DNA of 64,000 bases from Macrostomum hystrix (lineage: Eukaryota > Animalia > Platyhelminthes): NCBI GenBank assembly GCA_950097015.1, contig CATNEN010000015.1, positions 372,001-436,000 on the forward strand, in the 5' to 3' direction. Of the stretch, positions 203 through 63,200 are shown in pieces. How positions within the stretch are numbered: the first letter of the stretch is position 1; each line of letters starts with the position of its first letter. Both the position numbers and the translations under genes were made by a program. The notes below the pieces were generated by a model. The model saw only the letters and a program-made list of their open reading frames with translations. It had not been told where the DNA came from and ran no database searches.

Positions 203-2290
203 AGGACACCTGTACAGTTTTGAAGACACCTGTACAGATTTGAAGACACCTGTACAGTTTTGAAGACACCTGTACAGTTTTGAAGACCCTGTACAGTATT
301 AAATACACCTGTACAGTATTGAAGACACCTGTACAGATTTGAAGACACCTGTACAGTATTGAAGACACCTGTACAGTATTGAAGACACCTGTACAGTATT
401 GAAGACACCTGTACAGTATTGAAGACCCTGTACAGTATTGAAGACACCTGTACAGATTTGAAGACACCTGTACAGTTTTGAAGACACCTGTACAGTATTG
501 AAGACACCTGTACAGTATTGAAGACACCTGTACAGTATTGAAGACACCTGTACAGTATTGAAGACACCTGTACAGTATTGAAGACACCTGTACAGTTTTG
601 AAGACCCTGTACAGTATTAAATACACCTGTACAGTATTGAAGACACCTGTACAGTATTGAAGACACCTGTACAGTATTGAAGACACCTGTACAGTATTGA
701 AGACACCTGTACAGTTTTGAAGACACCTGTACAGTTTTGAAGACACCTGTACAGTATTGAAGACACCTGTACAGTATTGAAGACACCTGTACAGTATTGA
801 AGACACCTGTACAGTTTTGAAGACACCTGTACAGTATTGAAGACACCTGTACAGTATTGAAGACACCTGTACAGTATAGAAGACACCTGTACAGTTTTGA
901 AGACACCTGTACAGTATTGAAGACACCTGTACAGTTTTGAAGACCCTGTACAGTATTAAATACACCTGTACAGTATTGAAGACACCTGTACAGTTTTGAA
1001 GACACCTGTACAGTATTGAAGACACCTGTACAGTTTTGAAGACACCTGTACAGTATTGAAGACACCTGTACAGTTTTGAAGACACCTATACAGTTTTGAA
1101 GACACCTGTACAGTATTGAAGACACCTGTACAGTATTGAAGACACCTGTACAGTATTGAAGACACCTGTACAGTTTTGAAGACACCTGTACAGTATTGAA
1201 GACACCTGTACAGTATTGAAGACACCTGTACAGTTTTGAAGACCCTGTACAGTATTAAATACACCTGTACAGTATTGAAGACACCTGTACAGTTTTGAAG
1301 ACCCTGTACAGTATTGAAGACCCTGTACAGTTTTGAAGACACCTGTACAGTATTGAAGACACCTGTACAGTTTTGAAGACACCTGTACAGTATTGAAGAC
1401 ACCTGTACAGTATTGAAGACACCTGTACAGTATTGAAGACACCTGTACAGTTTTGAAGACCCTGTACAGTATTGAAGACACCTGTACAGTTTTGAAGACA
1501 CCTGTACAGTATTGAAGACACCTGTACAGTATTGAAGACACCTGTACAGTATTGAAGACACCTGTACAGTATTGAAGACACCTGTACAGTATTGAAGACA
1601 CCTGTACAGTTTTGAAGACCCTGTACAGTATTAAATACACCTGTACATTATTGAAGACACCTGTACAGTTTTGAAGACCCTGTACAGTATTGAAGACCCT
1701 GTACAGTATTGAAGACCCTGTACAGTTTTGAAGACACCTGTACAGTATTGAAGACACCTGTACAGTATTGAAGACACCTGTACAGTTTTGAAGACCCTGT
1801 ACAGTATTAAATACACCTGTACAGTATTGAAGACACCTGTACAGTTTTGAAGACCCTGTACAGTATTGAAGACCCTGTACAGTTTTGAAGACACCTGTAC
1901 AGTATTGAAGACACCTGTACAGTTTTGAAGACACCTGTACAGTATTGAAGACACCTGTACAGTATTGAAGACACCTGTACAGTATTGAAGACACCTGTAC
2001 AGTTTTGAAGACCCTGTACAGTATTGAAGACGCTGTACAGTTTTGAAGACACCTGTACAGTATTGAAGACACCTGTACAGTATTGAATACACCTGTACAG
2101 TATTGAAGACACCTGTACAGTTTTGAAGACACCTGTACAGTATTGAAGACACCTGTACAGTATTGAAGACACCTGTACAGTATTGAAGACACCTGTACAG
2201 TTTTGAAGACACCTGTACAGTATTGAAGACACCTGTACAGTATTGAAGACACCTGTACAGTATAGAAGACACCTGTACAGTTTTGAAGAC
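203..2290. repeat. Minisatellite, 20-bp unit GAAGACACCTGTACAGT(A/T)TT, about 105 copies, with interspersed 19-bp variant units
   Basis: Direct reading of the tandem unit, which contains the palindrome CTGTACAG. It explains the repetitive minus-strand ORFs at 61-2361. Confidence 0.97.
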
Positions 2291-2331
2291 AGCAAATTAA
2301 ATTTCTCGTTTAAGTACACAAATAGTTTTTC

Positions 2332-2393
2332 ACTAGCTGGAATTCGAACTTCAGACCTCACGGCTACGAGTCCAATGCTTGCACCACTGGGGA
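2332..2393 (-). mobile_element. tRNA-derived SINE head or tRNA pseudogene fragment
   Basis: Minus strand reads GTCCCAGTGGTGCAAGC...GAGGTCTGAAGTTCGAATTCCAGCTAG, with Pol III A-box-like and B-box-like (GTTCGAATTCC) motifs at tRNA-like spacing. The cloverleaf stems do not pair. Confidence 0.5.
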
Positions 2394-2861
2394 CTTAGAT
2401 TAATCAAGACACTTGAGTATCATTTTGTCATTTTTTGTGCGCTCTCTAAGTAAGCAGAAAAGTGCACGCACTGGTCAGTTAGCTGATTTAACCACATGAA
2501 AGGTTTTAATTGATTCATTCTTAAGGAGGCCGAATTTAATCCCCATCTGCTCTATTCGATTGTGAGCTCGGAAACAGGTAGAGGAAGCTGAGTACTGTAG
2601 TGCGATCTTTATTTAAATTTTAAATTTCATCCAAAACGCTACAAGCAGAATAGATCTTTCTCCACAGAATGACAAAAGCGTCTGATAACTAATATTTGCT
2701 TCCGTAACAGCGAGAACTCGCTTTGCAAGAAATGCCGAGAGCGGACGCTGAAACCAGAGCCGCGAACTAATTAGCCATGTCTCCGTGCCTTGAGCTCATT
2801 GGTTTGACAGGAAGATTACTGGCATGGCTCAGTGCGTCACGGATAACAAAGGTGAACTGGG

Positions 2862-3780
2862 ATGGGGTGAGACTGGTAGAGAGTGAGAGTGAGAGGGGGT
2901 GAGTGCAAGTGAGTGAGAGTGGGCTAGGGTGAGAGTGGTAGAGGGTGAGATTGGGAGGGAGTGAGAGTGGAAGGGAGTGAGAGTGGGAGGGAGTGAGAGT
3001 GGGAGGGAGTGAGAGTGGTAGAGGGTGAGATTGGGAGGGAGTGAGAGTGGTAGAGGGTGAGATTGGGAGGGAGTGAGATTGGGAGGGAGTGAGAGTGGGA
3101 GGGAGTGAGAGTGGGAGGGAGTGAGAGTGGGAGGGAGTGAGAGTGGGAGGGAGTGAGAGTGGTAGAGGGTGAGAGTGGGAGGGAGTGAGAGTGGTAGAGG
3201 GTGAGATTAGGAGGGAGTGAGATTGGGAGGGAGTGAGATTGGGAGGGAGTGAGATTGGGAGGGAGTGAGATTGGGAGGGAGTGAGATTGGGAGGGAGTGA
3301 GAGTGGTAGAGGGTGAGATTGGGAGGGAGTGAGATTGAGAGGGAGTGAGATTGGGAGGGAGTGAGAGTGGTAGAGGGTGAGATTGGGAGGGAGTGAGATT
3401 GAGAGGGAGTGAGATTGGGAGGGAGTGAGATTGGGAGGGAGTGAGATTGGGAGGGAGTGAGAGTGGTAGAGGGTGAGATTGGGAGGGAGTGAGATTGAGA
3501 GGGAGTGAGATTGGGAGGGAGTGAGAGTGGTAGAGGGTGAGATTGGGAGGGAGTGAGATTGAGAGGGAGTGAGATTGGGAGGGAGTGAGATTGGGAGGGA
3601 GTGAGAGTGGTAGAGGGTGAGATTGGGAGGGAGTGAGATTGAGAGGGAGTGAGATTGGGAGGGAGTGAGAGTGGTAGAGGGTGAGATTGGGAGGGAGTGA
3701 GATTGGGAGGGAGTGAGATTGGGAGGGAGTGAGATTGGGAGGGAGTAAGAGTGGTAGAGGGTGAGATTGGGAGAGTGTGA
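2862..3780. repeat. Minisatellite, 16-bp unit GGGAGTGAGA(T/G)TGGGA with variant GGTAGAGGGTGAGATT
   Basis: Direct reading; G-rich plus strand. Confidence 0.96.
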
Positions 3781-4236
3781 GGCTGCAGAACAACAGCTTC
3801 CGTCATTCTTGGCATTGATCGAAGGCAGTTGAAGAAAAAAACTAGTCAACGGAGCCAGGTGTCATCGACTCCGTCCGTTTGCCGTTGCCACGGGAGACTG
3901 CACGATTTGCCGGGAAAGTTGTGGAATTGCCGCTCAGCCCGTGTCAAATTCAGATACAGTTTGCCAGTGTTTGCCAATGCCCATTGTTTGTCTACCGCCA
4001 AAATGTCCGTTAAAAAAAGAAAATTTAACTTAAAAGAGATTTTTTAGTTCGAAAAAATTAAGACAATTTATGACAGGGCACCCACAGGGTCCATCCATTA
4101 GCGCAGATCTCATTATTGATACACTGCTTGCATCCAGACAGCCATGAGGCCTGTTGAAAGCATCTGGAAATGAACTTTTTTGAAATAGTTGCACTCCAGA
4201 ACTGCTTTGATGACCCCCATCACACTCGGAAACTAT

Positions 4237-6904
4237 CCATCTCACACTCTGCCTCTCACACTCTGCCTCTCACAGTCTGCCTCTCACAGTCTGCCTCTCA
4301 CAGTCTCCCTCTCACAGTCTCCCTCTCACAGTCTGCCTCTCACAGTCTCCCTCTCACACTCTGCCTCTCACACTCTGCCTCTCACAGTCTGCCTCTCACA
4401 GTCTGCCTCTCACAGTCTCCCTCTCACACTCTGCCTCTCACAGTCTCCCTCTCACAGTCTCCCTCTCGCAGTCTGCCTCTCACAGTCTGCCTCTCACAGT
4501 CTCCCTCTCGCAGTCTCCCTCTCGCAGTCTCCATCTCGCTGTCTCCCTCTCACAGTCTCCCTCTCGCTGTCTCCCTCTCACAGTCTGCCTCTCACAGTCT
4601 GCCTCTCACAGTCTCCCTCTCGCAGTCTCCCTCTCACAGTCTCCCTCTCACAGTCTCCATCTTAAAGTCTCCATTTTACAGTCTCCATCTTAAAGTCTCC
4701 ATCTCACAGTCTCCCTCTCACAGTCTCCCTCTCACAGTCTCCCTCTCGCAGTCTCCCTCTCACAGTCTCCCTCTCACAGTCTCCCTCTCACAGTCTCCCT
4801 CTCACAGTCTCCCTCTCACAGTCTGCCTCTCACAGTCTCCCTCTCACAGTCTCCCTCTCACAGTCTCCCTCTCACAGTCTGCCTCTCACAGTCTCCCTCT
4901 CGCAGTCTCCCTCTCACAGTCTGCCTCTCACAGTCTCCCCCTCACAGTCTCCCTCTCACAGTCTCCCTCTCACAGTCTGCCTCTCACAGTCTCCCTCTCA
5001 CAGTCTCCCTCTCACAGTCTGCCTCTCACAGTCTCCCTCTCACAGTCTCCCTCTCACAGTCTGCCTCTCACAGTCTCCCTCCCACAGTCTCCCTCTCACA
5101 GTCTGCCTCTCACAGTCTCCCTCTCACAGTCTCCCTCTCGCAGTCTGCCTCTCACAGTCTGCCTCTCACAGTCTCCCTCTCGCAGTCTCCCTCTCGCAGT
5201 CTCCATCTCGCTGTCTCCCTCTCACAGTCTCCCTCTCGCTGTCTCCCTCTCACAGTCTGCCTCTCACAGTCTGCCTCTCACAGTCTCCCTCTCACAGTCT
5301 CCCTCTCACAGTCTCCCTCTCACAGTCTGCCTCTCACAGTCTCCCTCTCACAGTCTCCCTCTGACAGTCTGCCTCTCACAGTCTCCCTCTCACAGTCTCC
5401 CTCTCACAGTCTCCATCTCACAGTCTCCCTCTCACAGTCTCCCTCTCGCAGTCTGCCTCTCACAGTCTGCCTCTCACAGTCTCCCTCTCGCAGTCTCCCT
5501 CTCACAGTCTCCCTCTCACAGTCTCCATCTTAAAGTCTCCATCTCACAGTCTCCCTCTCACAGTCTGCCTCTCACAGTCTGCCTCTCACAGTCTGCCTCT
5601 CACAGTCTGCCTCTCACAGTCTCCCTCTCACAGTCTGCCTCTCACAGTCTCCCTCTCGCTGTCTCCCTCTCACAGTCTCCCTCTCACAGTCTGCCTCTCA
5701 CAGTCTGCCTCTCACAGTCTCCCTCTCGCAGTCTCCCTCTCACAGTCTCCCTCTCACAGTCTCCATCTTAAAGTCTCCATTTTACAGTCTCCATCTTAAA
5801 GTCTCCATCTCACAGTCTCCCTCTCACAGTCTCCCTCTCACAGTCTCCCTCTCGCAGTCTCCCTCTCACAGTCTCCCTCTCACAGTCTGCCTCTCACAGT
5901 CTCCCTCTCGCAGTCTGCCTCTCACAGTCTCCCTCTCACAGTCTCCCTCTCGCAGTCTCCCTCTCACAGTCTCCCTCTCACAGTCTGCCTCTCACAGTCT
6001 CCCTCTCGCAGTCTGCCTCTCACAGTCTGCCTCTCACAGTCTCCCTCTCGCAGTCTCCCTCTCACAGTCTCCCTCTCACAGTCTGCCTCTCACAGTCTCC
6101 CTCTCGCAGTCTCCCTCTCACAGTCTCCCTCTCACAGTCTCCTTCTTAAAGTCTCCATCTCACAGTCTCCCTCTCACAGTCTCCCTCTCACAGTCTGCCT
6201 CTCACAGTCTCCCTCTCGCAGTCTGCCTCTCGCAGTCTCCCTCTCACAGTCTCCCTCTCACAGTCTCCATCTTAAAGTCTCCATCTCACAGTCTCCCTCT
6301 CACACTCTGCCTCTCACAGTCTGCCTCTCACAGTCTGCCTCTCGCAGTCTCCCTCTCACAGTCTCCCTCTCACAGTCTCCCTCTCACAGTCTGCCTCTCA
6401 CAGTCTCCCTCTCACAGTCTCCCTCTCACAGTCTCCCTCTCACACTCTGCCTCTCACAGTCTCCCTCTCGCAGTCTGCCTCTCACAGTCTCCCTCTCGCA
6501 GTCTGCCTCTCACAGTCTCCCTCTCACAGTCTGCCTCTCACACTCTGCCTCTCACAGTCTCCCTCTCGCAGTCTGCCTCTCACAGTCTCCCTCTCGCAGT
6601 CTGCCTCTCACAGTCTCCCTCTCACAGTCTGCCTCTCACAGTCTCCCTCTCACAGTCTCCCTCTCACAGTCTCCCTCTCACAGTCTGCCTCTCACAGTCT
6701 CCCTCTCACAGTCTCCCTCTCACAGTCTCCCTCTCTCGCAGTCTCCCTCTCACAGTCTCCCTCTCACAGTCTGCCTCTCACAGTCTCCCTCTCGCAGTCT
6801 CCCTCTCACAGTCTCCCTCTCACAGTCTGCCTCTCACAGTCTCCATCTCACAGTCTCCCTCTCACAGTCTCCATCTCACAGTCTCCATTTTAAAGTCTGC
6901 ATCT
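4237..6904. repeat. Minisatellite, 14-bp unit CACAGTCT(C/G)CCTCT, about 190 copies
   Basis: Direct reading. Variant blocks recur at exact multiples of 14 (672 and 1106 bp apart). Confidence 0.97.
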
Positions 6905-7262
6905 GAGTGTGTTATATGTTTAAACATATAAAACATCCTCAGTCAGGTTTGTTCTATCATTCATTTCCAAAGTGCGTCTCCTTTCATCCGCATGTCATAA
7001 TAAATTAATCTAAGCCCGGATAATGAAATTAAAGATGTCAAAAATTGACTGGAAATGTAGCAGACAGGCAGGTAACCACAGTCGACGACAGAAAACACTA
7101 GGGGATTGTTTCTGGCCAATCAGAATTCACTTTTCACTGACTAAAACTATGATGTATCCGAGGATGAGCCACACACAATGCGTGCGTCCCTTCTCTTCCC
7201 CCCTCTGTCTCTTAAGCCAGCTTTTGTGTGTCTCGACAGCAGGGTCAAAAATATGCTGGGCG

Positions 7263-9193
7263 CACACTCACACACTCACACACTCACACACACACACTCA
7301 CACACTCACACACTAACACACTCACACACTCACACACTCACACACACACACTCACACACTCACACACTAACACACTCACACACTCACACACTCACACACT
7401 CACACACTCACACACTCACACACTCACACACTCACACACTCACACACACACACTCACACACTCACACACTCACACACTCACACACACACACTCACACACT
7501 CACACACTAACACACTCACACACTCACACACTCACACACTCACACACTCACACACTCACACACTCACACACTCACACACTCACACACTCACACACTCACA
7601 CACTCACACACTCACTCACACACTCACACACTCACACACTCACTCACTCACTCACACACTCACACACTCACACACACACACACTCACACACTCACACACT
7701 CACACACTCACACACTCACACACTCACACACTCACTCACTCACTCACTCACTCACACACTCACTCACACACTCACACACTCACACACTCACACACTCACA
7801 CACACACACTCACACACTCACACACACACACACTCACACACTCACACACTAACACACTCACACACTCACACACTCACACACTCACACACTCACACACTCA
7901 CACACTCACACACTCACACACTCACACACTCACACACTCACACACTCACACACTCACTCACACACTCACACACTCACACACTCACTCACTCACTCACACA
8001 CTCACACACTCACACACACACACACTCACACACTCACACACTCACACACTCACACACTCACACACTCACACACTCACTCACTCACTCACTCACTCACACA
8101 CTCACTCACACACTCACACACTCACTCACACACTCACACACTCACACACTCACTCACACACTCACACACTCACACACTCACTCACACACTCACTCACTCA
8201 CTCACTCACTCACACACTCACTCACACACTCACACACTCACTCACACACTCACACACTCACACACTCACTCACACACTCACACACTCACTCACACACTCA
8301 CACACTCACTCACACACTCACACACTCACTCACTCACTCACTCACTCACACACTCACACACTCACTCACACACACTCACACACTCACACACTAACACACT
8401 CACACACTCACACACTCACACACACACACTCACACACTCACACACTAACACACTCACACACTCACACACTCACACACTCACACACTCACACACTCACACA
8501 CTCACACACTCACACACTCACACACACACACTCACACACTCACACACACACACACTCACACACTCACACACTAACACACTCACACACTCACACACTCACA
8601 CACTCACACACTCACACACTCACACACTCACACACTCACACACTCACACACTCACACACTCACACACTCACACACTCACTCACACACTCACACACTCACA
8701 CACTCACTCACTCACTCACACACTCACACACTCACACACACACACACTCACACACTCACACACTCACACACTCACACACTCACACACTCACACACTCACT
8801 CACTCACTCACTCACTCACACACTCACTCACACACTCACACACTCACTCACACACTCACACACTCACACACTCACTCACACACTCACACACTCACACACT
8901 CACTCACACACTCACTCACTCACTCACTCACTCACACACTCACTCACACACTCACACACTCACTCACACACTCACACACTCACACACTCACTCACACACT
9001 CACACACTCACTCACACACTCACACACTCACTCACACACTCACACACTCACACACTCACTCACTCACTCACACACTCACTCACTCACACACTCACACACT
9101 CACACACTCACTCACTCACACACTCACACACTCAAACACTCACACACTCACACACTCACACACTCACACACTCACACACTCACACACTCACAC
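7263..9193. repeat. CA-rich microsatellite, (CACACTCA)n / (CACT)n / (CA)n compound
   Basis: Direct reading; explains the His/Thr/Ser/Leu ORFs at 7178-8394. Confidence 0.98.
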
Positions 9194-10889
9194 GGAAGAC
9201 AAGACAGAAATAAAGGCATTGGGACATTGTCAGAGAGGCACCGGAAATGTCTGCAGGCAAGGCCTAAGCTGGGAATTCACCGCTGCTGGCTGCACGAGTC
9301 TGCTGTGCTCAGGAAGTTGTGAGTCCGCGAACAGCCTTGGAGAAAGAAGCTACAGAGATATTTGACTACCAGCTCTGCGATAACCGGATCTGGAATCTGT
9401 GTAGCAGTCGGGAACACAGGCCCGACTGACTGACTGGCATCAAAGCTTTGACGATGTTGTCGAGGTGAGAACACGCGCCCATTGCGAATGACTTTCCGAG
9501 TTTCGAAAAGAATCGACGGCTGGTCCGAGCCGGTGGGAATTCTATCGAAAATTTGCGAACAGATGTGCGAAATAAAAATGGGCAGCTGTATCAACAAGGG
9601 TATCGAGTTCGCGCCCCGTTGGCAAAGTACCTGAGGGCTGGGGAGGGGAGGCACAGTGCGCGAGACTGGAAAATAACAAACATAAGCTCGCGACATTAAT
9701 CAATTCGAACCGGCCCGACACGCAACACTGGCTGGGCCCGGCAAACTGAAACTAAATTGCTGCTTTGGAGGAAGATTCGGAGGAAATATTTATTAATTGT
9801 CGACGCAAATCCACCTGCTCAAAGTGTCACGCACAGGCGGTAGTTAGACTGGGGAGCAACTGCATGGTGTGAGATGGTTTACGACGAGATAATGGGATAA
9901 TAAAACATTTTACACGATTTGCTTTGTAATAGAAGCAGAATATTGTTACCTAAAACTTAATTATTAGACTGCATCAACACGCAGTGAAGTGACTTCTGAG
10001 CAGCAGCTCTGGAGAACTGAACTCTAAAACTCTTGCTCCATTGAGTCAGGGAGAGAGCACCATTGGATGGGGCCGAGGACTTTTTTACCATAGACTATAA
10101 TGAATTAAACGGCGTTTATGATATACTAAATGTGATTGCCCGTTGGACCATTAAAAGACTTAATGGGTTTGGAATGCAGACTGTTTGAGCCATAGACAAG
10201 AGATTGCATACTTGGAAGAAGCTCATTAAACATCCAATAAAAAAGCAGACAGACAAGAGTAAACGTCGCTGTGAAAGCAAGAATATTCTCTCAGAAATCT
10301 GACCTTTAGTCTATGGTCCAAAGTATCGCATTATTGGCTGGACAGTGTAAGTGCATGCTCAGGGTGAAGTGGAATGAACAGAAAATGATTTCGTTCAGTG
10401 AGTCTCAACAATCTATTGAAGTCCTAGGAATGTGGTGGCGCGTACAGTCGAGTCGTCATTAACGTCCGAGCACTACAAACGCATGCTTGACTTCGGTAGT
10501 CAAAGAGCTGGTTGCAAAATTCTTCGGTAGCCGCCCTGTCAGACACAAGCTCAAGCGGTAGAGTACTATTGAGTGAGCACAGCTCACCGCTCACATACGA
10601 GTCCGCAGGTCAGTTTTGGTCCTGGCTTTGGCATCAATCAAAGCGCGGATACTTGCCCCGAGAGTTAATCTAATTAATCACCTTGGAGTAAAGTGTGGCT
10701 CAGTTATTTTCTAGCAGACCAAAGAATGAAGCTTCTTATTTTGGCGGCTGAATGGCTGAATGAGGAAGGCGCCACTTGATGCATTTCGGGCCGCAAACTG
10801 CTGACCATGCAATAAAGTTTGCAGTTGCCGAGGCCTTTGCGAAGGGAGAGTAGAGATTTGGAATGGGATTAGAGAATGGGATACTTTAA

Positions 10890-11582
10890 GATGAGAATGG
10901 GAGATTAGTGTGGGGCGAATGCAAGATTAGAAGAGGAGAATGGAGGACTAGGATTACGAGAATGGGCGATTAGGGTGAAGAGAATGCGAGATTAGAAGAG
11001 GAGAATGGGAGATTAGGATATGAGAATGTGAGATCAGGAGATGAGAATGAGAGATTAGGATATAAGAATGGGAGATTAGGATATAAGAATGGGAGATTAG
11101 GATATAAGAATGGGAGATTAGGATATGAGAATGGGAGATTCGGATATAAGAATGGGAGATTAGGATATGAGAATGGGAGATTCGGATATAAGAATGGGAG
11201 ATTAGGATATAAGAATGGGAGATTCGGATATAAGAATGGGAGATTAGGATATAAGAATGGGAGATTAGGATATGAGAATGGGAGATTAGGATATGAGAAT
11301 GGGAGATTAGGATATAAGAATGGGAGATTAGGATATGAGAATGGGAGATTAGGATATAAGAATGGGAGATTAGGATATAAGAATGGGCGATTAGGATATA
11401 AGAATGGGAGATTAGGATATGAGAATGGGAGATTAAGATATAAGAATGGGAGATTAGGATATGAGAATGGTAGATTAGGATATTAGAATGGGAGATTAGG
11501 ATATGAGAATGGGAGATTAGGATATAAGAATGTTAGATTAGGATATAATAATGGGAGATTAGGATATAATAATGGGAGATTA
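10890..11582. repeat. Minisatellite, 21-bp unit GGGAGATTAGGATAT(A/G)AGAAT with degenerate left flank
   Basis: Direct reading. The in-frame GRLGYKN ORF at 11028-11486 follows from the 21-bp unit. Confidence 0.95.
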
Positions 11583-12383
11583 GCAAAATATTCTAATGAT
11601 CAGGGGAGATTAGGTGAGGATCATGAGGAAAAGGGTGGGACAGAGGTAGAGGATGGGGGATAGTAGGCTTGAACCGCTGACGGATGGAGTGAGAGTGCTG
11701 GTAGGCATGAGCATGAGCTCAGTTCAGCTCAGGCAGTGTCTGGGTGTGTTAGTAGGCAGCTGCAGCGATGAGGGATGGAGAGAAGTTGATTGTGCGGCCG
11801 GGAGGAGGAACTGCAGAGGGCCGGCTGCAGTGTGAATGACGCACAGGCCGACTTCCTGCATAATCAGCTGATGGCTGAGTCGGCATCGATCACCGGCCCC
11901 GACAGGCCGACAGAAATCTAAACTTCTCCTCCGCAGCACAATGTGAATTCGCTTGCTGCTTTGTTTTGGCAAGCCCGCCTGAGCTGCTCAATATTGACGC
12001 GGGCTCAGCCCCGGATCCACAGGTAGCGAAATTGGCTTGGCCCCGCAACACAAAACAAAAACATGAGCTGGGCTTTAAAAACCGATGTGCTCAGGCCAGC
12101 GGTGGAGTAGGCCTTGATTGCATTACTGGTACAAAATACACTTTTGTTTGCTTCTGATTTTATATATTTTACCGGCTAATTAATTTCTTAGTCAGTGCTA
12201 AAAAGTATGAAGGATCGAATATAAAGTACATTAGGCGCATAGAGACAGCATGGCAACGAGACTTGAGGAACTGGCAACCACAAATACCTTGAATTCGCAA
12301 AGTTTGCAATCTGGTTGCCATGCGGTTGCCATGCAAGTAAAATGAAACTCGGTGAGCAGAGCTGAGTCGGGGAAAAGCATCGA

Positions 12384-57200: not shown

Positions 57201-60200
57201 CCCTCGAAGTCGATGAGGTCGCCGATGCCCAGGTGCCTGAGCACGGCCTGGACGGCCTCGTCAGTGATCTTCTGCACGCCAGTCTCAGTCAGGTGCCTGA
57301 TGAAGTCCTTGACCTGGCCGCCACCAGGCAAGCTGATCGAGGCGTTCATGTTGCAGCCCACCTGCGGCACCATGGAGTGTTCGAGCAGCACGAAGTCTGT
57401 GCGAACCGAGTCCACCGTGAGGCTGAGCTTCAGGTCCACGATGAACAGGCGCCGGTCGCTGTCCTTGCGGATCGTGTAGCTGGAAAGCGCGAAATCGAGA
57501 CCATCATTTTTTAGCTCCGATTGAAAATATATTTCAAGCCAAGCAATTGAAGAATGCTGCAGTTAGACATTATACTCGCTGGTGTTCTGCTCACATGATC
57601 TGCAGAGGTGACCCCAGGTTGAACGTCTCGACCTGGCCCCACTGGTAGTAGTAGAGAGTCTGGTTGTAGTACATGTTGTTGAAGCCGATGGAGAACTTGT
57701 ACTCGCAGGGATCCAGCAGCAGAGACAGTTGTGCCGTCGGCTTGTAAACTTTGAAGTCCAGCTCTGCGCAGCAGGTAACTCCCATGCAGAACTCGTTCAT
57801 GTGGCAGCGCACCTGGTTGGGCAGTCTTGGTAGATGGAACACCTTGGGGCAGCCTGTGAAAATTAACCGAAGCTTTCATGAATGAAATTATGAAACTAAA
57901 TGCAACTGCTCTTGGGTAGCGCGCAATGATTCTCATAAAAAAATGAACGAAGCAACGCTCACGGCTATCCCAGCCATTGTTGAATGTGCTCGATGGCAGC
58001 ACGCAAGCTGGGGAATCAAAGAATGCGCGCTGCAGGCCAAACCTTCGCACCACTGCCTCCCATGCCGTCTGCACTGTCGAGTCGGAGGCCTTTTCGCCGA
58101 GCAATTTGGCGAAGTCGCCCAACGAGCCGCCGGGCAGAGCGCCGGTGAAGTTGCTGTGGCAGTAGGGCTGGGGCACCACCGACTCGTTCAGCAGCTGAAC
58201 AGACAACTCGCAGCTGTCGGTGAAGCAGACTGCCAGGCCAAAGTCCAGCTTCAGGAAGTCAGTTCTGACTCTGTCCACCGAGTAGCTGCAAATATATTTC
58301 GCGATTCGATCATATTCTCGATGTCCGGCTTGTGAATGGGACCAAGTGTGCTTGCATTGGACTTTGCCTATGTTTACGGTAAGTAAGCAGAATGGGACTC
58401 ACTCCAGCCGAACTGCCTTATTGCCGATCCACTGCGACTTTTTCTGTCCCCAGTGAGCTTCCAGCAGGGAGGTGTTGAAGTGCAGCCTCCCGATGCCGAT
58501 GGAGCTGATGTAGTCGCAGGTGTCCAACAGAATCCAGGCCTTGGCGTGGTAGTTGAGGAAGCTGAGGTCCAGTTTGCTGGTCTTAAATGCGAAGTCCAGG
58601 CAGCACTCGATGCCGAGGCAGTTGTCCGTCACTCGGCACTGCAGGTTGGACGGCAGCTGCGGCAGCCGCACGTGCGGACAGGCCGTGAAGTTGCTCATCC
58701 GTGCGCATCTGCCCTTCGAAAGGACGTTGGTGAGACCTGTCCTTGCGAGCAGGATCTCCGCGGCCTTGTCCAGCGCGGCCGGGCTGGAGGAGGTTCCGAG
58801 CTCCCGGAGGAAGTCCTCCAGCTTGTAGGTGTTGCCAGGCAGGACTCGGTGCCAGTCGTTGCCGCAGAAGGGCACTGGCACCGGTAGCCGGTTGAGCACG
58901 CTGATGTAGTCCAGGAGGCAGGATGAGGAGCCCGGACAGATGGCCAGCTGGAGGCTGAACAGCGGCGCATCCGGGCTGTCTGGATTCTCTTCGAATCGGT
59001 ACCTGGCGGATTGATTGTTATCAGCAAGCTTTGTTGGATTGATCAGTCACTCAAGAGTCGATTGGCTGGCTTTGTGAAGGCCTGAAGCCAATAAAATTTA
59101 CGCTTTTAACCAAAAAAGTACGACATTGCTTACTTCAGCTTAAGAGCTCCGACATTCTGTGAAAACTCCTGGCCGTAGGGAATCGCGAACAGGATCTTGT
59201 TGAAGGTCAGCGAGTTGAAACCGAAACTAAAGGTCAGCGAGCAGGCGTCAATTTTTGCCCAGCCTGTAATGCGCATGGGACCATGAATTCAGCTATGGGT
59301 TGCGAAAATGTGAAATTTGTGTGCAAAAGCTACACACCTTGCAAGTACTTGGCAATTTCGAATCCCCTGATCGAAGCCTCGAGTCCCATGCAGCACTCGA
59401 ACTTGGTGCAGTTCGGCGACGCCTGGCAGAAGACGCGACTCCTTAGCGCCTCTGGCAGCTGCGGCAGCTCCAGCTGCACTGGCCCGTTGCGGCACTGGCG
59501 GAAGTGCAGCTCTGCTAGCTCGATCAGCTGCGTCTTGTTGTCAGAGTCCACCACCTGAACTCCACGCTTTCGCAGCCCCTCCAGCAGCACTTCGTTCGAC
59601 ACCTTGTCTGGGAGTGAGCATGCCTTGGCGTTGAAGACTTCGGCTAAGTCCCTCAGACCCAGCTGCTGTAGCTGGTCCTCCCACCACTTCTGCATCACGG
59701 CGTTGATGGCTGAATTCGATGTCTTCTGCAGCAAAGACTTCAGGTGCTTCTTGTTCAGAACCTGCTGCCAGTTCAGCATGGGCCAGGTGACGATTCCGTC
59801 CTTGCAGATGGGAATCGGCAGCACGAGCTCCTGCAAGACCTGGATGCCAAAGGGGGTGAGTAGTCAGCGGCTTGTGTCGCTGCCTCACTTTCCAGTGGTC
59901 TCTGGTTTGTTCCTCCCTCCAAGTCATGATTATTTCGGGGCTTAGTTGGAGGATTGCGAAGTAGTGACTTGCGGAGATGCACCTTATTCTGTGCAACCAA
60001 AGCTAATTTAAAATAGCTTAACCCTTGACTTCTGCATGCCTGCTTGTGTGTTTGTGTTTGTGCGTTGGGCAGGGTGTGAGGCGTTGTATGGGGGTGGGGC
60101 GGGTGTGCACCAATGTGTACTCTCGTCACTACCATTCAGGCATCTAAGTCCTCCCCTGGTTTGGTCTGCTCTGTGCGTGTCCGGGCCTGGGGTGAGAGGC

Positions 60201-63200
60201 ACTACGGCTGCCGCCCCCTTCCCCGCTTGGCTTGCTGCTGAGGTGCCTGTGTCCAGGGGTCCAGATGGCGCGATTGGGACTCCCGCCTAGTTCGTCGGCC
60301 TGGGGGCATGCCGTTCCTCTGCCTGTGCGTCAAGTGCCCCAGGTCCCCTGCAAATAATTAAGTAAAGTAAAGACCTGGATGCCAGCGTCGCAGTTGCTGG
60401 TTGACGCGCACATGAAAAGGCGAAGGCTGAACATCACGCTGTCATCCGTCTTCGCGAACTGGTAGGACAGTTTAATCTTTCTTGTCAGAACGTCGAAGAA
60501 GCTCATTTCGTCCGTCAGCCAGATCTCTTTCTCCTCAAAGTCTGAAATATGCTTATGCACTTATTATGACTGTTTTCTGTTTCCTAGATTTGATTTGAAC
60601 AGGTCCTAAGTCGCATACCATTGGCTGAGAAGCTGTCTAGCTCAATCGAGTGCACGAAGCGGTTCATGTCCTTCAGCTTCAGTCCGAACTCCAGCTTCTT
60701 GCTGCTGCCGCACGGATCCAGCCGAGCCCACAGCTTCGCCGCCTTGCGGAACATGTTCACTTTGAGATCCAGGCAGCACTCCATGGATAGGCAGCTCTTG
60801 TCGAACTGACAGTAGATTGGCTTCTGCAGAGACAGTTGCATCAAGGGACAGCCTGGGCAGTACGGTTGGTATTTAGGTTAGTAAGAATGCTGGTGAAAAA
60901 AATGGGCATAGTATGCTGAACAAGATAGACTCACGAGAGTCACTCTGCTTCATGCGGTCAATAAGGCTGGCCTTGGGCATGACGTCCACTTCCTTTTGAT
61001 CGAAGCCCTTTTTAATGAGCTCGTTCCGTAGCTCCTCTTCGGACATCAGGTAGGGACTCTGGCACGGCTGGTCCTCGAGGACATCTTTCACCGACAGCAG
61101 CATCTGGTCGGTCTCATTTCGCGTTGACGCTAATATGTTTCTAACTTCCTCTGACTCAAGAAAAGCAACGACATGGGCCAGCCGCATTCGGCGTAGGTTG
61201 AACTTCTGGAATATCCGGTCCACTCCGAGCCTTTTCGGGAAATTTAGGACGCTGCTAAACTTTCTAAGGACTCTCTCGTTAGTGGTTGGCTGGGCATTGG
61301 AATTCCCAGTGTCCTCTGCAAACAGGTTCTTGTAGTCCGCCATCAGCGGTGCGATTGTTTCCTCTCTGGCCTCCCGCCGTGGGCTGTTATCGAACACCCA
61401 GCCATATCTCGTTAGTCTGGCTGAGAGAACCAGAAATCCCAGAACGTACACTTGGGCATCGCCACAGTAGGGCACCCAGTTGGACAAGGTAATTCCGCGA
61501 GGCTCCAGATACTTGCTGGCATCCAGGTACGTACCCGGGCCGGACCTAGCAGACATGTGGATGTGGTTGATGCACTTGCCCGTGTTGGCCGCAAAGCCCA
61601 GCTGGCCTCCAGAATTCAGCCGCACGCCCTCAGTTGCCTGGTTGTTGCCTCTGGCGAAGTCAAACACGGGCAGCTCGCTTTCTTGAAACCTGCCGTTGTC
61701 CATCAGGAACTTCACATTCTCAAATATGAGGTGAAACCTGTCCAGACTGAAGCCCTTCGGAATCACGACGAGCTGGTTGGGTCGCTCCGGGCCTCGGTAA
61801 TACTCGCCCAGGATGGGCACAACGATTCTCTGTCCCGGGTGGACCTGCAAGTCCACGCCCGGGTGAGACCACAGGCCGTCGCCATTCGCGGGAAAGAAGC
61901 CGTCGGAACCGCAGCCTGATCCGGGCAGGCGATAGGTGCGAGGGAACTGGGGATGCACCCGCGGCCCCAAGATGGACTCCAATATGGTACGGAGTGCGTT
62001 CCACGTCTCAACAAGACCATTGAAGGCCTCTTTTAAACCTCGGATGATTTTCTTCCAGATCTGAATGAGACCCTCGGCGATCCCCATCATGGTTTGAACT
62101 CGGCTCAGCGGTTCGATGAGGCTGCTCTCCACTCCTTGAAGAAGACCCGCAAGCTTTGAGAATTCCTGAAATTAATTAAATTGTTAGCTTGCAAACCTTT
62201 GTTTTAAAGTTCCAACATAATAATCGCCGCTCACAAAGAGCCAGAAGTACCTGGTCAGACACAAAGCCAGATGAGCGGTTTGTCCCAGCCAACACAGCCT
62301 TGGCTCTTCTGTCCAGTCCTGTGCGCATCGCCTCAGTGAACTCCGAATGAAGGCTGTCGCAAAGTTTGCCGATTTCCCACCAGAAGGTCCTGTCTTCTGC
62401 ATGAAAGAGTATAGGAATTGATGAGAGAATGTACAGCATTCAGCCTAGTCTCAAAGTCACAGCGCACTCACCGTTAGTCGTATGGCATGCAGCCTGCGTT
62501 CGATTCTGGCTATCGATGAGGCCCTGGACTGCTGTTCCTATTTGGTGGAAGGCCTTGAATGCATTCAGCATGGACTCTTTGGGCGAGCGATACAGTTTCG
62601 GAAAGATGTTCACTAAGAGATCCAGGCTCTCTTTCAGCTGCTTGCCAGAGACTGGCATCTGGTTGTTTATCGTGTCGAACAGAGTCTAAAACGGTGTGCG
62701 CGAGCGCAAGTGTGATTTCTGGAACTCTGAACAATTCTATGAGCTCTGCTCTAACTTTTTACTCCTTCTCTCACACCAAAATCTCTTCGGTCTGATGTGA
62801 GTCAATTAAATCGGAGTAAGTGCATGCGTGTGTACGAATGCGTGTTGTCGATAGACATACAACAACTACCATGATATTTTGAGATGGTATGCCTAGCAGT
62901 ATGAAATGTTGCAGATCAAGCACCGCAAACATTCCACTCACAATGTAGAAGTCAGTGGCATCCGCCTTGACGGTGCTGGACAGGATGAGAATTCTTCTGA
63001 GCACAGCTAGCGGTGGCTGCAGCTGCTCAGGCAGCTCCTGTGCGTCCAGCTGGGACAGGATGCTCAGCGCGTGGTCCCCTGAGTCGCTCATCTGCGCCAC
63101 AATCTCGGGCACTTTTCCGTTAAACTCGTCACCAAGTCTTTTTATGACAGAGAACAGCTGATCGGGATTCGTTGGCGCAAACAGCTCGCGGAAACCGTCC

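What the first reader, a model, noticed from the sequence alone, without database searches (positions are those of the whole stretch)
59835..60384. An intron that is exactly a transposon-like insertion: a 15-bp TSD supplies both splice sites
The coding sequence T-GGC-ATC-CAG-GTC-TT (G-I-Q-V) is duplicated at 60384-60370 and 59849-59835, and it contains CAG|GT. The first copy provides the donor and the second the acceptor, so removing 535 nt restores ...NCDAGIQ|VLQELVLPIPIC perfectly. The insert has a retroposon-like tail (AAATAATTAAGTAAAGTA) in antisense orientation. It also has a CTGAC branch-site motif about 25 nt before the AG, plus a pyrimidine tract. None of the other 20 repeats has an intron at this position. 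The donor GTCTTT is weak, but other introns here use GTCTGA, GTTCGC and GTTTGA. Without splicing the frame stops after 12 codons. So this is either a recent intron gain caught in the act (introner-like, but with a long retro-type TSD) or a knockout allele.
Basis: partly seen in the sequence, partly recalled or inferred. Interest (0 to 1): 0.85.

Follow-up and report, generated by a model that had tools for sequence, protein, structure and literature searches.

The report
SINE insertion spliced as an intron
A short jumping-DNA element (a SINE-like retroposon) landed backwards inside a coding exon of a giant repeat-protein gene, and the 15-base duplication it made supplies both splice sites, so the cell cuts it out exactly as an intron; this is a clean, RNA-supported animal case of a known but seldom documented route to a new intron, and it is old, not recent.

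Summary
An exact 15-bp direct repeat (59835-59849 and 60370-60384) flanks a 520-bp element. That element belongs to a dispersed SINE-like family: at least 44 scored copies, uniform 5' ends, simple-repeat tails and TSDs of 8-22 bp. It lies antisense to the gene.

Spliced contigs from three runs in two studies all join 59834 to 60370, skipping 535 nt. Only one cut position gives GT..AG. The four neighbouring introns are spliced in the same contigs.

DNA contigs of run X1 bridge both SINE junctions at full single-copy depth and show no empty-site form.

A paralogous gene 350 kb away has an uninterrupted exon with ..TCCAG|GTAC.. at the site. So does the neighbouring repeat of the same gene. This is therefore an intron gain at a proto-splice site, not a knockout allele.

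It is not "caught in the act". The copy differs from its family consensus by about 4-6%, and the closest other copy is 91.5% identical.

It is not a specialised introner either. Among about 90 sampled copies, only this one and one other candidate sit inside long ORFs.

The scan had already found and followed up the same mechanism on other DNA of this genome.

Kind: new member of a known kind. Interest is moderate.

The parts
59840..60374 (-). The new intron: 535 nt, cag|GTCTTTAC...CATCCAG|gtc. It equals 5 nt of TSD copy 1, the 520-nt SINE, and 10 nt of TSD copy 2.
   Evidence: Joint 59834>60370 'skips 535, CT..AC at cut +5, 15 nt ambiguous' in contigs of X2, X3 and X5. Boundaries printed.
59850..60369 (+). 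SINE-like retroposon body, antisense to the gene.
   Evidence: 44 scored matches of 396 candidates in the genome at 77-93% identity. Shared 5' end (A)GGGGGTGAGTGGGTCAGCGG and tail ..CCCCTGCAAATAAGTAAGTAAAGTA. No inverted repeats.
60370..60384 (-). TSD copy 1, upstream in the gene. 60384-60375 is the end of the exon (TGGCATCCAG). 60374-60370 is the 5' splice site GTCTT.
59835..59849 (-). TSD copy 2. 59849-59840 is the last 10 nt of the intron including the AG. 59839-59835 is the first exon bases GTCTT.
59863..59867 (-). Candidate branch site CTGAC (A at 59864, -25). It is the reverse complement of GTCAG in the conserved SINE head.
   Evidence: Sequence. Its use as a branch point is inferred, not shown.
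59850..59862 (-). Pyrimidine-rich stretch TACTCACCCCCTT. It is the reverse complement of the G-rich 5' end of the SINE.
   Evidence: Sequence. Its function is inferred.
60352..60369 (+). SINE 3' tail AAATAATTAAGTAAAGTA. Read antisense it follows the donor as TACTTTACTTAATTATTT.
60375..60541 (-). Upstream half of the split exon (..FSLRLFMCASTSNCDAGIQ).
   Evidence: RNA contig pieces 60370-60541 in X2, X3 and X5, with 0 other letters.
59337..59839 (-). Downstream half of the split exon (VLQELVLPIPICKDG..).
   Evidence: RNA contig pieces 59337/59421-59834 in X2, X3 and X5, with 0 other letters.
59904..59913 (+). B-box-like motif GGTTTGTTCC (GGTTCGTTCC in the family consensus). An A-box-like TGGGTCAGCGG lies at about 59858-59870.
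   Evidence: Read by eye. ARAGORN and Rfam do not call a tRNA.

Best explanation
A roughly 520-bp non-autonomous retroposon (SINE-like) inserted, antisense to the gene, into a coding exon of a giant repeat-domain gene. The target was TGGCATCCAG|GTCTT, and the insertion produced a 15-bp target-site duplication. The target already held a proto-splice site, CAG|GT. The upstream TSD copy now serves as the 5' splice site (cag|GTCTT). The downstream copy serves as the 3' splice site (..CATCCAG|gtc). Read backwards, the conserved SINE head supplies a CTGAC branch-site candidate at -25 and a C/T-rich tract just upstream of the AG. The spliceosome removes exactly the SINE plus one TSD copy (535 nt), so the mRNA equals the pre-insertion sequence. 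Shown here: the TSD, family membership, presence in DNA at full depth, precise removal in RNA contigs, and the empty site in a paralog and in the neighbouring repeat. Inferred: which branch point and tract are used, the age of the insertion, and that the RNA-source animals carry the insertion.
For: Exact 15-bp repeat at the element's ends. The element is multi-copy, with the same 5' end and tail elsewhere and locus-specific TSDs of 8-22 bp. Contigs of X2, X3 and X5 (two studies) carry joint 59834>60370 together with the four flanking GT..AG introns, in one contig of 19.4 kb in X3. They show 0 mismatches to the assembly in the flanking exons. A 15-bp repeat is shorter than Logan's 31-letter words, so the joint cannot be an assembly collapse. 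DNA run X1 has contigs bridging both junctions (59421-59969 at depth 81.5; 60328-60710 at depth 94.7). These depths equal the single-copy flanks (83.7 and 96.2), and no empty-site joint is present. The apparent second haplotype at 58497-58658 is a paralog, not an allele. The paralog at G000:C15:~779.8-780.9 kb aligns straight across the site with ..GATGTCCAGGTACTACAGGAGCTCGTG.. and shares the neighbouring intron. The neighbouring repeat has no intron at the homologous position. The copy is 4.1-6.2% diverged from the family consensus.
Against: No DNA from the very animals used for RNA was available, and no RNA contig crosses an exon/SINE boundary. Transcription of the insertion-bearing allele is therefore inferred, from three facts: the insertion is at full depth in X1, the RNA haplotype is 100% identical to the assembly, and the insertion is old. 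The donor GTCTTT is weak compared with the four neighbours. The intron is 4-7 times longer than its neighbours. Contigs cannot show low-level retention or cryptic splicing.
Confidence: 0.85

Rival explanations
1. Insertion polymorphism. The assembled animal carries a disrupting SINE (a null allele), and the RNA runs come from animals with the empty allele. The 'joint' would then be the uninterrupted exon, not a splice.
For: The mRNA sequence cannot tell splicing from an empty site, because the joint is ambiguous over 15 nt. RNA and DNA samples have different sample codes. No unspliced contig was seen.
Against: In X1 the junction contigs have full single-copy depth and there is no empty-site contig, so X1 is homozygous. 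The copy is 4-6% diverged from its consensus, so an empty allele would have to be a very old polymorphism. Yet RNA contigs from two studies are identical to the insertion-bearing haplotype over all flanking exons. The only GT..AG solution falls exactly on the TSD, and a branch site plus pyrimidine tract sit in the right place. The rest of the gene is intact.
Confidence: 0.07
2. An older intron already existed at this position and was later colonised by a SINE.
For: SINEs commonly sit inside introns. Most sampled copies are in non-coding DNA.
Against: The intron holds nothing but the SINE and TSD bases: 5 + 520 + 10 nt. The paralog and the neighbouring repeat have continuous exons there.
Confidence: 0.02
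3. The family is a dedicated introner, that is, an element selected or specialised to insert in genes and be spliced out, generating many introns.
For: A second copy of the same family lies antisense in a 561-codon ORF with an 11-bp TSD (L036). Earlier scan notes list several SINE+TSD introns in this genome. The antisense head carries a ready-made branch site and pyrimidine tract.
Against: About 73 other sampled copies with TSDs show no convincing exon-splitting case. A pattern search for an antisense head followed by CAGGT gave 3 hits, none exonic. TSD sequences are unrelated to one another, so no AGGT target preference is evident.
Confidence: 0.06

Closest known systems
Introners: TE-derived introns whose splice sites are co-opted from the TSD (Gozashti et al. 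2022, PMC9860276; Gozashti et al. 2025, PMC12130899)
   Same: A transposable element inserted in an exon is removed as a spliceosomal intron. Both splice sites are recruited from the TSD or insertion site, as described for Florenciella and 'more complex cases'. The mRNA length is unchanged. Non-LTR retrotransposon-derived introners are reported as about 5% of the classified families.
   Different: Introners are families that create many near-identical introns, and most are TIR DNA transposons with TSDs of 3-9 bp. Here the element is a retroposon with a 15-bp TSD. Its family is overwhelmingly non-genic, so intron creation looks like a rare by-product. The host is a bilaterian (a flatworm according to earlier scan notes). 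Introners are reported as rare in animals.
Proto-splice-site model of intron origin (Dibb and Newman 1989, cited in PMC3488318)
   Same: Insertion at a pre-existing MAG|GT. Duplication of that site gives a working donor and acceptor. The paralog still shows ..CCAG|GTAC.. uninterrupted.
   Different: The model is general and says nothing about the inserted element. Here the inserted element also supplies the branch site and pyrimidine tract.
Other SINE+TSD introns found by this scan in the same genome (s1-394529 RasGAP, 9-bp TSD; s1-258391 cubilin-like, 13-bp TSD; s1-348870)
   Same: Same genome and the same mechanism as summarised in the notes. Those cases were also judged old rather than recent.
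   Different: Those intervals are 344-389 letters long, so they probably involve a shorter SINE. I could not fetch them to compare. The present case has the longest TSD (15 bp) and an empty-site paralog.
Antisense Alu exonisation in primates (Sela et al. 2007, cited in PMC11282704; the mechanism itself is from my own knowledge)
   Same: A SINE read in antisense offers spliceosome signals, namely a pyrimidine tract and a 3' splice-site context.
   Different: Alu insertions in introns create new exons. Here an insertion in an exon creates a new intron.

Membership tests
SINE (non-autonomous non-LTR retroposon) | Dispersed multi-copy family with a common 5' end | tested here: met
   44 scored matches of 396 candidates on many contigs. 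338 hits to the 30-nt head pattern at up to 3 mismatches, against 0 for the control pattern. Shared start (A)GGGGGTGAGTGGGTCAGCGG.
SINE (non-autonomous non-LTR retroposon) | Locus-specific TSDs of variable length, and no terminal inverted repeats | tested here: met
   TSDs of 8-22 bp, mostly 10-15, abut the head and tail in most of about 90 copies. No inverted repeats were found in 59600-60600.
SINE (non-autonomous non-LTR retroposon) | A-rich or simple-repeat 3' tail | tested here: met
   AAATAAGTAAGTAAAGTA-type tails of variable length. The sister family has (GATA)n tails.
SINE (non-autonomous non-LTR retroposon) | Internal pol III promoter or small-RNA-derived (tRNA, 5S, 7SL) head | tested here: inconclusive
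   A-box-like TGGGTCAGCGG and B-box-like GGTTCGTTCC (AGTTCGATTCA in the sister family) were seen by eye. ARAGORN finds no tRNA, and Rfam gives no tRNA, 5S or 7SL match at E<=1-5.
SINE (non-autonomous non-LTR retroposon) | Partner LINE sharing the 3' end | not tested
   Not searched.
U2-type GT-AG spliceosomal intron | GT..AG termini and precise removal from mRNA | tested here: met
   Joint 59834>60370 with CT..AC on the + strand at cut +5, in X2, X3 and X5. It lies in the same contigs as four flanking GT..AG introns.
U2-type GT-AG spliceosomal intron | Branch point and polypyrimidine tract actually used | not testable with these tools
   CTGAC at -25 and TACTCACCCCCTT are present. Lariat reads would be needed to show use.
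U2-type GT-AG spliceosomal intron | The intron sequence is present in the DNA of the animals that gave the RNA | not testable with these tools
   Only one DNA run (X1) was listed and laid. It has the insertion at full depth and no empty site.
Intron gain (rather than loss elsewhere) | Homologous sequences lack the intron, and the intron has an identifiable exogenous origin | tested here: met
   Paralog with a continuous exon. Neighbouring repeat continuous. The intron equals SINE plus TSD. Orthologs in other species could not be found.
Introner family (sensu Gozashti et al.) | Many similar introns in unrelated genes created by one element family | tested here: not met
   In about 90 sampled copies only the focal one and L036 lie in long ORFs. 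The targeted pattern search added none. This was a sample, not the whole genome.

The most novel reading that the evidence does not exclude
The SINE families of this flatworm may be a recurrent, mechanistically predisposed source of new introns. Read antisense, their conserved head provides a built-in branch site and pyrimidine tract. Any exonic insertion whose long retro-type TSD contains AG|GT would then be spliced at once, even with a weak donor. If dozens of such introns exist genome-wide, this would be a retroposon-based, introner-like process operating in a bilaterian.
Probability: 0.2. Interest if true: 0.75.

Novelty: new member of a known kind. Interest (0 to 1): 0.5.

Why it matters
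Documented intron gains in animals with a known mechanism are scarce. Here all the parts can be read directly: the donor element family, the 15-bp TSD holding the proto-splice site, an empty-site paralog, and spliced transcripts. It shows that an ordinary retroposon, not a specialised introner, can create a constitutively spliced intron in one step. It also shows that the antisense SINE head can supply the 3' splice-site signals. Together with the other cases noted in this genome, it gives a small natural series. That series could be used to ask which TSD and orientation combinations make an exonic insertion survivable, and how tolerant this spliceosome is of weak donors such as GTCTTT.

Tried and rejected
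- tRNA origin of the SINE head: ARAGORN on the window copy and on 8 other loci, and Rfam at permissive E-values on the focal copy and a sister-family copy, gave no tRNA, 5S or 7SL call. I therefore do not claim the head is tRNA-derived.
- Orthologs for an empty-site test in other species: the search for homologous proteins with the downstream exon half (167 aa, by reference) found nothing at E<=1e-5. Its first attempt failed on a frame error. The tool sees only proteins of 0.55-1.75 times the query length, so this blank says little.
- Pfam on six ORFs of the gene gave no family at or above its curated cut-off.
- The heterozygosity reading of the variant contig at 58497-58658 was rejected, because it is a paralog at C15:781633-781883.
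- Genome-wide hunt for more exon-splitting copies: ORF-span screening of about 90 copies and a pattern search (antisense head followed within 20 nt by CAGGT) found no further convincing case apart from L036.
- The search of earlier findings by sequence returned nothing.
Full report
**1. The observation**

On the minus strand the gene reads ..AAC TGC GAC GCT GGC ATC CAG | GTC TTT ACT TTA CTT AAT.. at 60384-60370. It reads ..CCCCC TTT GGC ATC CAG | GTC TTG CAG GAG CTC.. at 59849-59835.

The repeat finder reports a perfect 15-nt direct repeat, AAGACCTGGATGCCA on the + strand, at 59835-59849 and 60370-60384, with 535-nt spacing. The 15-mer has no other match in the window even with two mismatches. 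Only 2 of 100 shuffles gave two matches. No inverted repeats are present in the region.

**2. What lies between the repeats**

The 520-bp core (59850-60369, + strand) hits the window's own genome, which has 220 Mb in 42 contigs. There were 396 first-look candidates, of which 44 scored matches on many contigs at 77-93% identity.

When oriented and printed with their flanks, the copies start at the same place, (A)GGGGGTGAGTGGGTCAGCGGCTAA... They end in ...CCCCTGCAAATAAGTAAGTAAAGTA-type tails of variable length. Each is flanked by its own direct repeat of 8-22 bp, mostly 10-15 bp.

A 30-nt head pattern has 338 hits at up to 3 mismatches, against 0 for the reversed control. These hits include a more uniform sister family of about 590 bp with a (GATA)n tail.

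These features are the anatomy of a non-autonomous non-LTR retroposon (a SINE): a uniform 5' end, a simple-repeat tail, variable long TSDs, no TIRs and no long ORF.

A-box-like and B-box-like motifs are visible by eye. However, ARAGORN and Rfam do not recognise a tRNA or any other small RNA in the head. The source RNA is therefore left open.

The element is on the + strand and the gene on the minus strand, so the insertion is antisense.

**3. Is it spliced?**

The look-up of sequencing runs listed one DNA-like run, X1. It holds 0.90 of the sampled words and has 197 Mb of contigs. It also listed seven runs that hold 0.66-0.68 of the words, from two studies.

Four runs were laid on 58300-61300. 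The contigs of X2, X3 and X5 skip five intervals, and all five have CT..AC on the + strand, which is GT..AG for the gene:
- 58999>59131
- 59262>59337
- 59834>60370 (535 nt, ambiguous over 15 nt, GT..AG only at cut +5)
- 60541>60619
- 60851>60934

These three runs are therefore RNA. In X3 one 19.4-kb contig runs through all five joints. The pieces flanking the SINE have 0 differences from the assembly. Logan's words are 31 letters long, so a 15-bp repeat cannot produce a false join.

No RNA contig crosses an exon/SINE boundary. The RNA contigs that lie inside the SINE carry differences from this copy and loose ends, so they come from other copies.

In X1 (DNA) there is no 59834>60370 joint. Contigs 59421-59969 (depth 81.5) and 60328-60710 (depth 94.7) bridge both junctions. 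These depths match the single-copy flanks at 83.7 and 96.2.

The one place with two X1 contigs, 58497-58658 with 8 differences, is a paralog at C15:781633-781883 and not a second allele. Depths of about 82-96 are therefore the full depth, and the insertion is homozygous in X1.

**4. Polarity: gain, not loss elsewhere**

A paralogous gene about 350 kb away, in inverted orientation, matches the exon halves on both sides of the SINE. Only 8 nt lie between the two matches, which is exactly what an empty site predicts.

The alignment runs straight through..GAGTTCGATGTCCAGGTACTACAGGAGCTCGTG.. The neighbouring short intron is shared with the paralog. The target CAG|GT thus pre-existed as a proto-splice site.

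Within the gene, the neighbouring repeat has the homologous ..CLLDYIS|VLNRLPVPVPFC.. inside one RNA-supported exon, 58403-59002.

The intron contains nothing except 5 nt of TSD, the SINE, and 10 nt of TSD. This excludes an older intron that was later colonised.

**5. Age**

The copy differs from a consensus of 30 copies by 6.2%. Against a cleaner consensus of 16 near-full-length copies it differs by 4.1% (21 of 512 substitutions, plus 18 indel positions). That places it in the middle of the family's range of 2.4-5.4%.

Its closest relative in the genome is 91.5% identical. No near-identical copies were seen for this family.

The insertion is therefore old, roughly as old as the family's burst. 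Rates of 2.6-4.4e-9 per site per year are quoted for other invertebrates in PMC12130899. If they applied here, the age would be of the order of 10^7 years. This is inference only.

Age also argues against the polymorphism rival. An empty allele would have to be ancient, yet RNA from two studies is identical to the insertion-bearing haplotype.

**6. How it works**

| Step | Status |
|---|---|
| Insertion with a 15-bp TSD | shown |
| Donor cag\|GTCTTT, from TSD copy 1 followed by the antisense tail TACTTTACTT | shown |
| Acceptor ..TTTGGCATCCAG\|gtc, from TSD copy 2 | shown |
| CTGAC (A at 59864, -25) as branch site; it is the reverse complement of GTCAG in the conserved head | inferred |
| TACTCACCCCCTT as pyrimidine tract; it is the reverse complement of the G-run at the SINE 5' end | inferred |

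In sense orientation the element would end in an A-rich tail before the AG. Only antisense insertions are therefore expected to be spliceable.

The donor is weak compared with the four RNA-supported neighbours, GTAAGC, GTGTGT, GTATGC and GTGAGT. At 535 nt the intron is also much longer than its neighbours, which are 74-131 nt. Even so, the spliced form is the only one assembled.

**7. Is the family an introner?**

I fetched 60 further copies and screened about 90 in all. For each I asked whether an ORF spans the reconstructed empty site.

- Only the focal copy has a long spanning ORF among the unselected copies: 231 codons, antisense.
It is the same family, lies antisense in a 561-codon ORF, and has an 11-bp TSD, TACCGTTGGCC.
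- L096 sits on a pre-existing donor; read antisense its TSD is CAAG|GTGAGAATT.
- L043 sits in a reverse-transcriptase ORF.
- The rest are in non-coding or repetitive DNA.

A pattern search for an antisense head followed within 20 nt by CAGGT gave three hits, none exonic. Intron creation is therefore a rare by-product of an ordinary SINE, not a family specialisation.

A rough expectation fits this, though it is my own arithmetic and not a tool result. A TSD of 10-15 nt holds AGGT on a given strand about 3-5% of the time. Only a few per cent of exonic antisense insertions would therefore be tolerated.

**8. Comparison with what is known**

- TE-derived introns whose splice sites are co-opted from the TSD are established for introners. 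Cases where both sites come from the TSD or insertion site are included (PMC9860276).
- Non-LTR retrotransposon-derived introner families are reported as about 5% of the classified families (PMC12130899).
- Single introns of retrotransposon origin are said to be reported in many eukaryotes (PMC11282704).
- Introners are rare in animals.
- The proto-splice-site model (Dibb and Newman, cited in PMC3488318) predicts exactly this geometry.

This scan had already followed up the same mechanism on other DNA of this genome, called a flatworm in those notes (s1-394529, s1-258391, s1-348870). The present case is thus another clean member of a known kind. Its distinguishing points are the long 15-bp TSD, the in-genome empty-site paralog, and RNA support from two studies.

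**9. Limits**

- RNA evidence comes from contigs, so retention or minor isoforms cannot be excluded.
- Only one DNA run was available, and it may be the sample the assembly was made from.
- No orthologs were found.

Noticed in passing
A donor ACC|GTTGGC in the first TSD copy and an acceptor ..GGCCAG|TC just past the second would remove the SINE and drop three codons in frame. There is no RNA check.
   Followed up: partly
L096 (G000:C1:26737514-26739914): A SINE copy whose 13-bp TSD, read antisense, is CAAG|GTGAGAATT. A 259-codon ORF ends 5 codons past it. The element seems to have landed on an existing exon-intron boundary and duplicated a consensus 5' splice site.
   Followed up: no
L077-L096 (contig C1 of G000): A sister SINE family of about 590 bp has the head GCGAGTGGGTCAGCGGCTAACG and a (GATA)n tail. 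Its head sequence is far more uniform than in the focal family, so it is probably younger and more abundant.
   Followed up: partly
L005, L020, L084, L098, L099: Several independent SINE copies are inserted in the same other repeat (..CACACAGGTGTGTACATCTGCCCTGACTTTC..). This is either a preferred target or a very abundant host element.
   Followed up: no
L043 (G000:C15:1440571-1442971): A SINE copy with a 13-bp TSD interrupts an ORF carrying the reverse-transcriptase-like motif FIDFRKAFDS|V. This is a SINE nested in a LINE-like element and a possible clue to the partner LINE.
   Followed up: no
G000:C15:~778000-782400 (L032, L034, L035) compared with window 58400-60900: An inverted paralog of the giant repeat gene lies about 350 kb away. 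DNA identity varies along it (96%, 86%, 87% and 69% in different pieces), which suggests patchy gene conversion or uneven constraint. A variant contig matching the paralog is present in RNA run X5 but not in X2 or X3.
   Followed up: partly
window 60873-62132 (-): A 419-aa ORF upstream of the repeats has no Pfam hit at E<=0.1. Its nearest ESM-Atlas feature clusters are all M23 peptidases, at scores of 0.88-0.89, below the 0.9 mark.
   Followed up: partly
window 59916-60319: The RNA runs contain contigs of other SINE copies, with differences from this copy at 59953, 60071 and 60204 and loose ends such as TGTGTGTGAGGTGCCTGCTCAGGGGAGGCG. SINE sequence is therefore present in transcripts from elsewhere in the genome.
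   Followed up: no
window 2001-12000: Blocks with extreme GC skew, from +0.53 to -0.68 over 2-kb windows, which looks satellite-like. Not examined.
   Followed up: no
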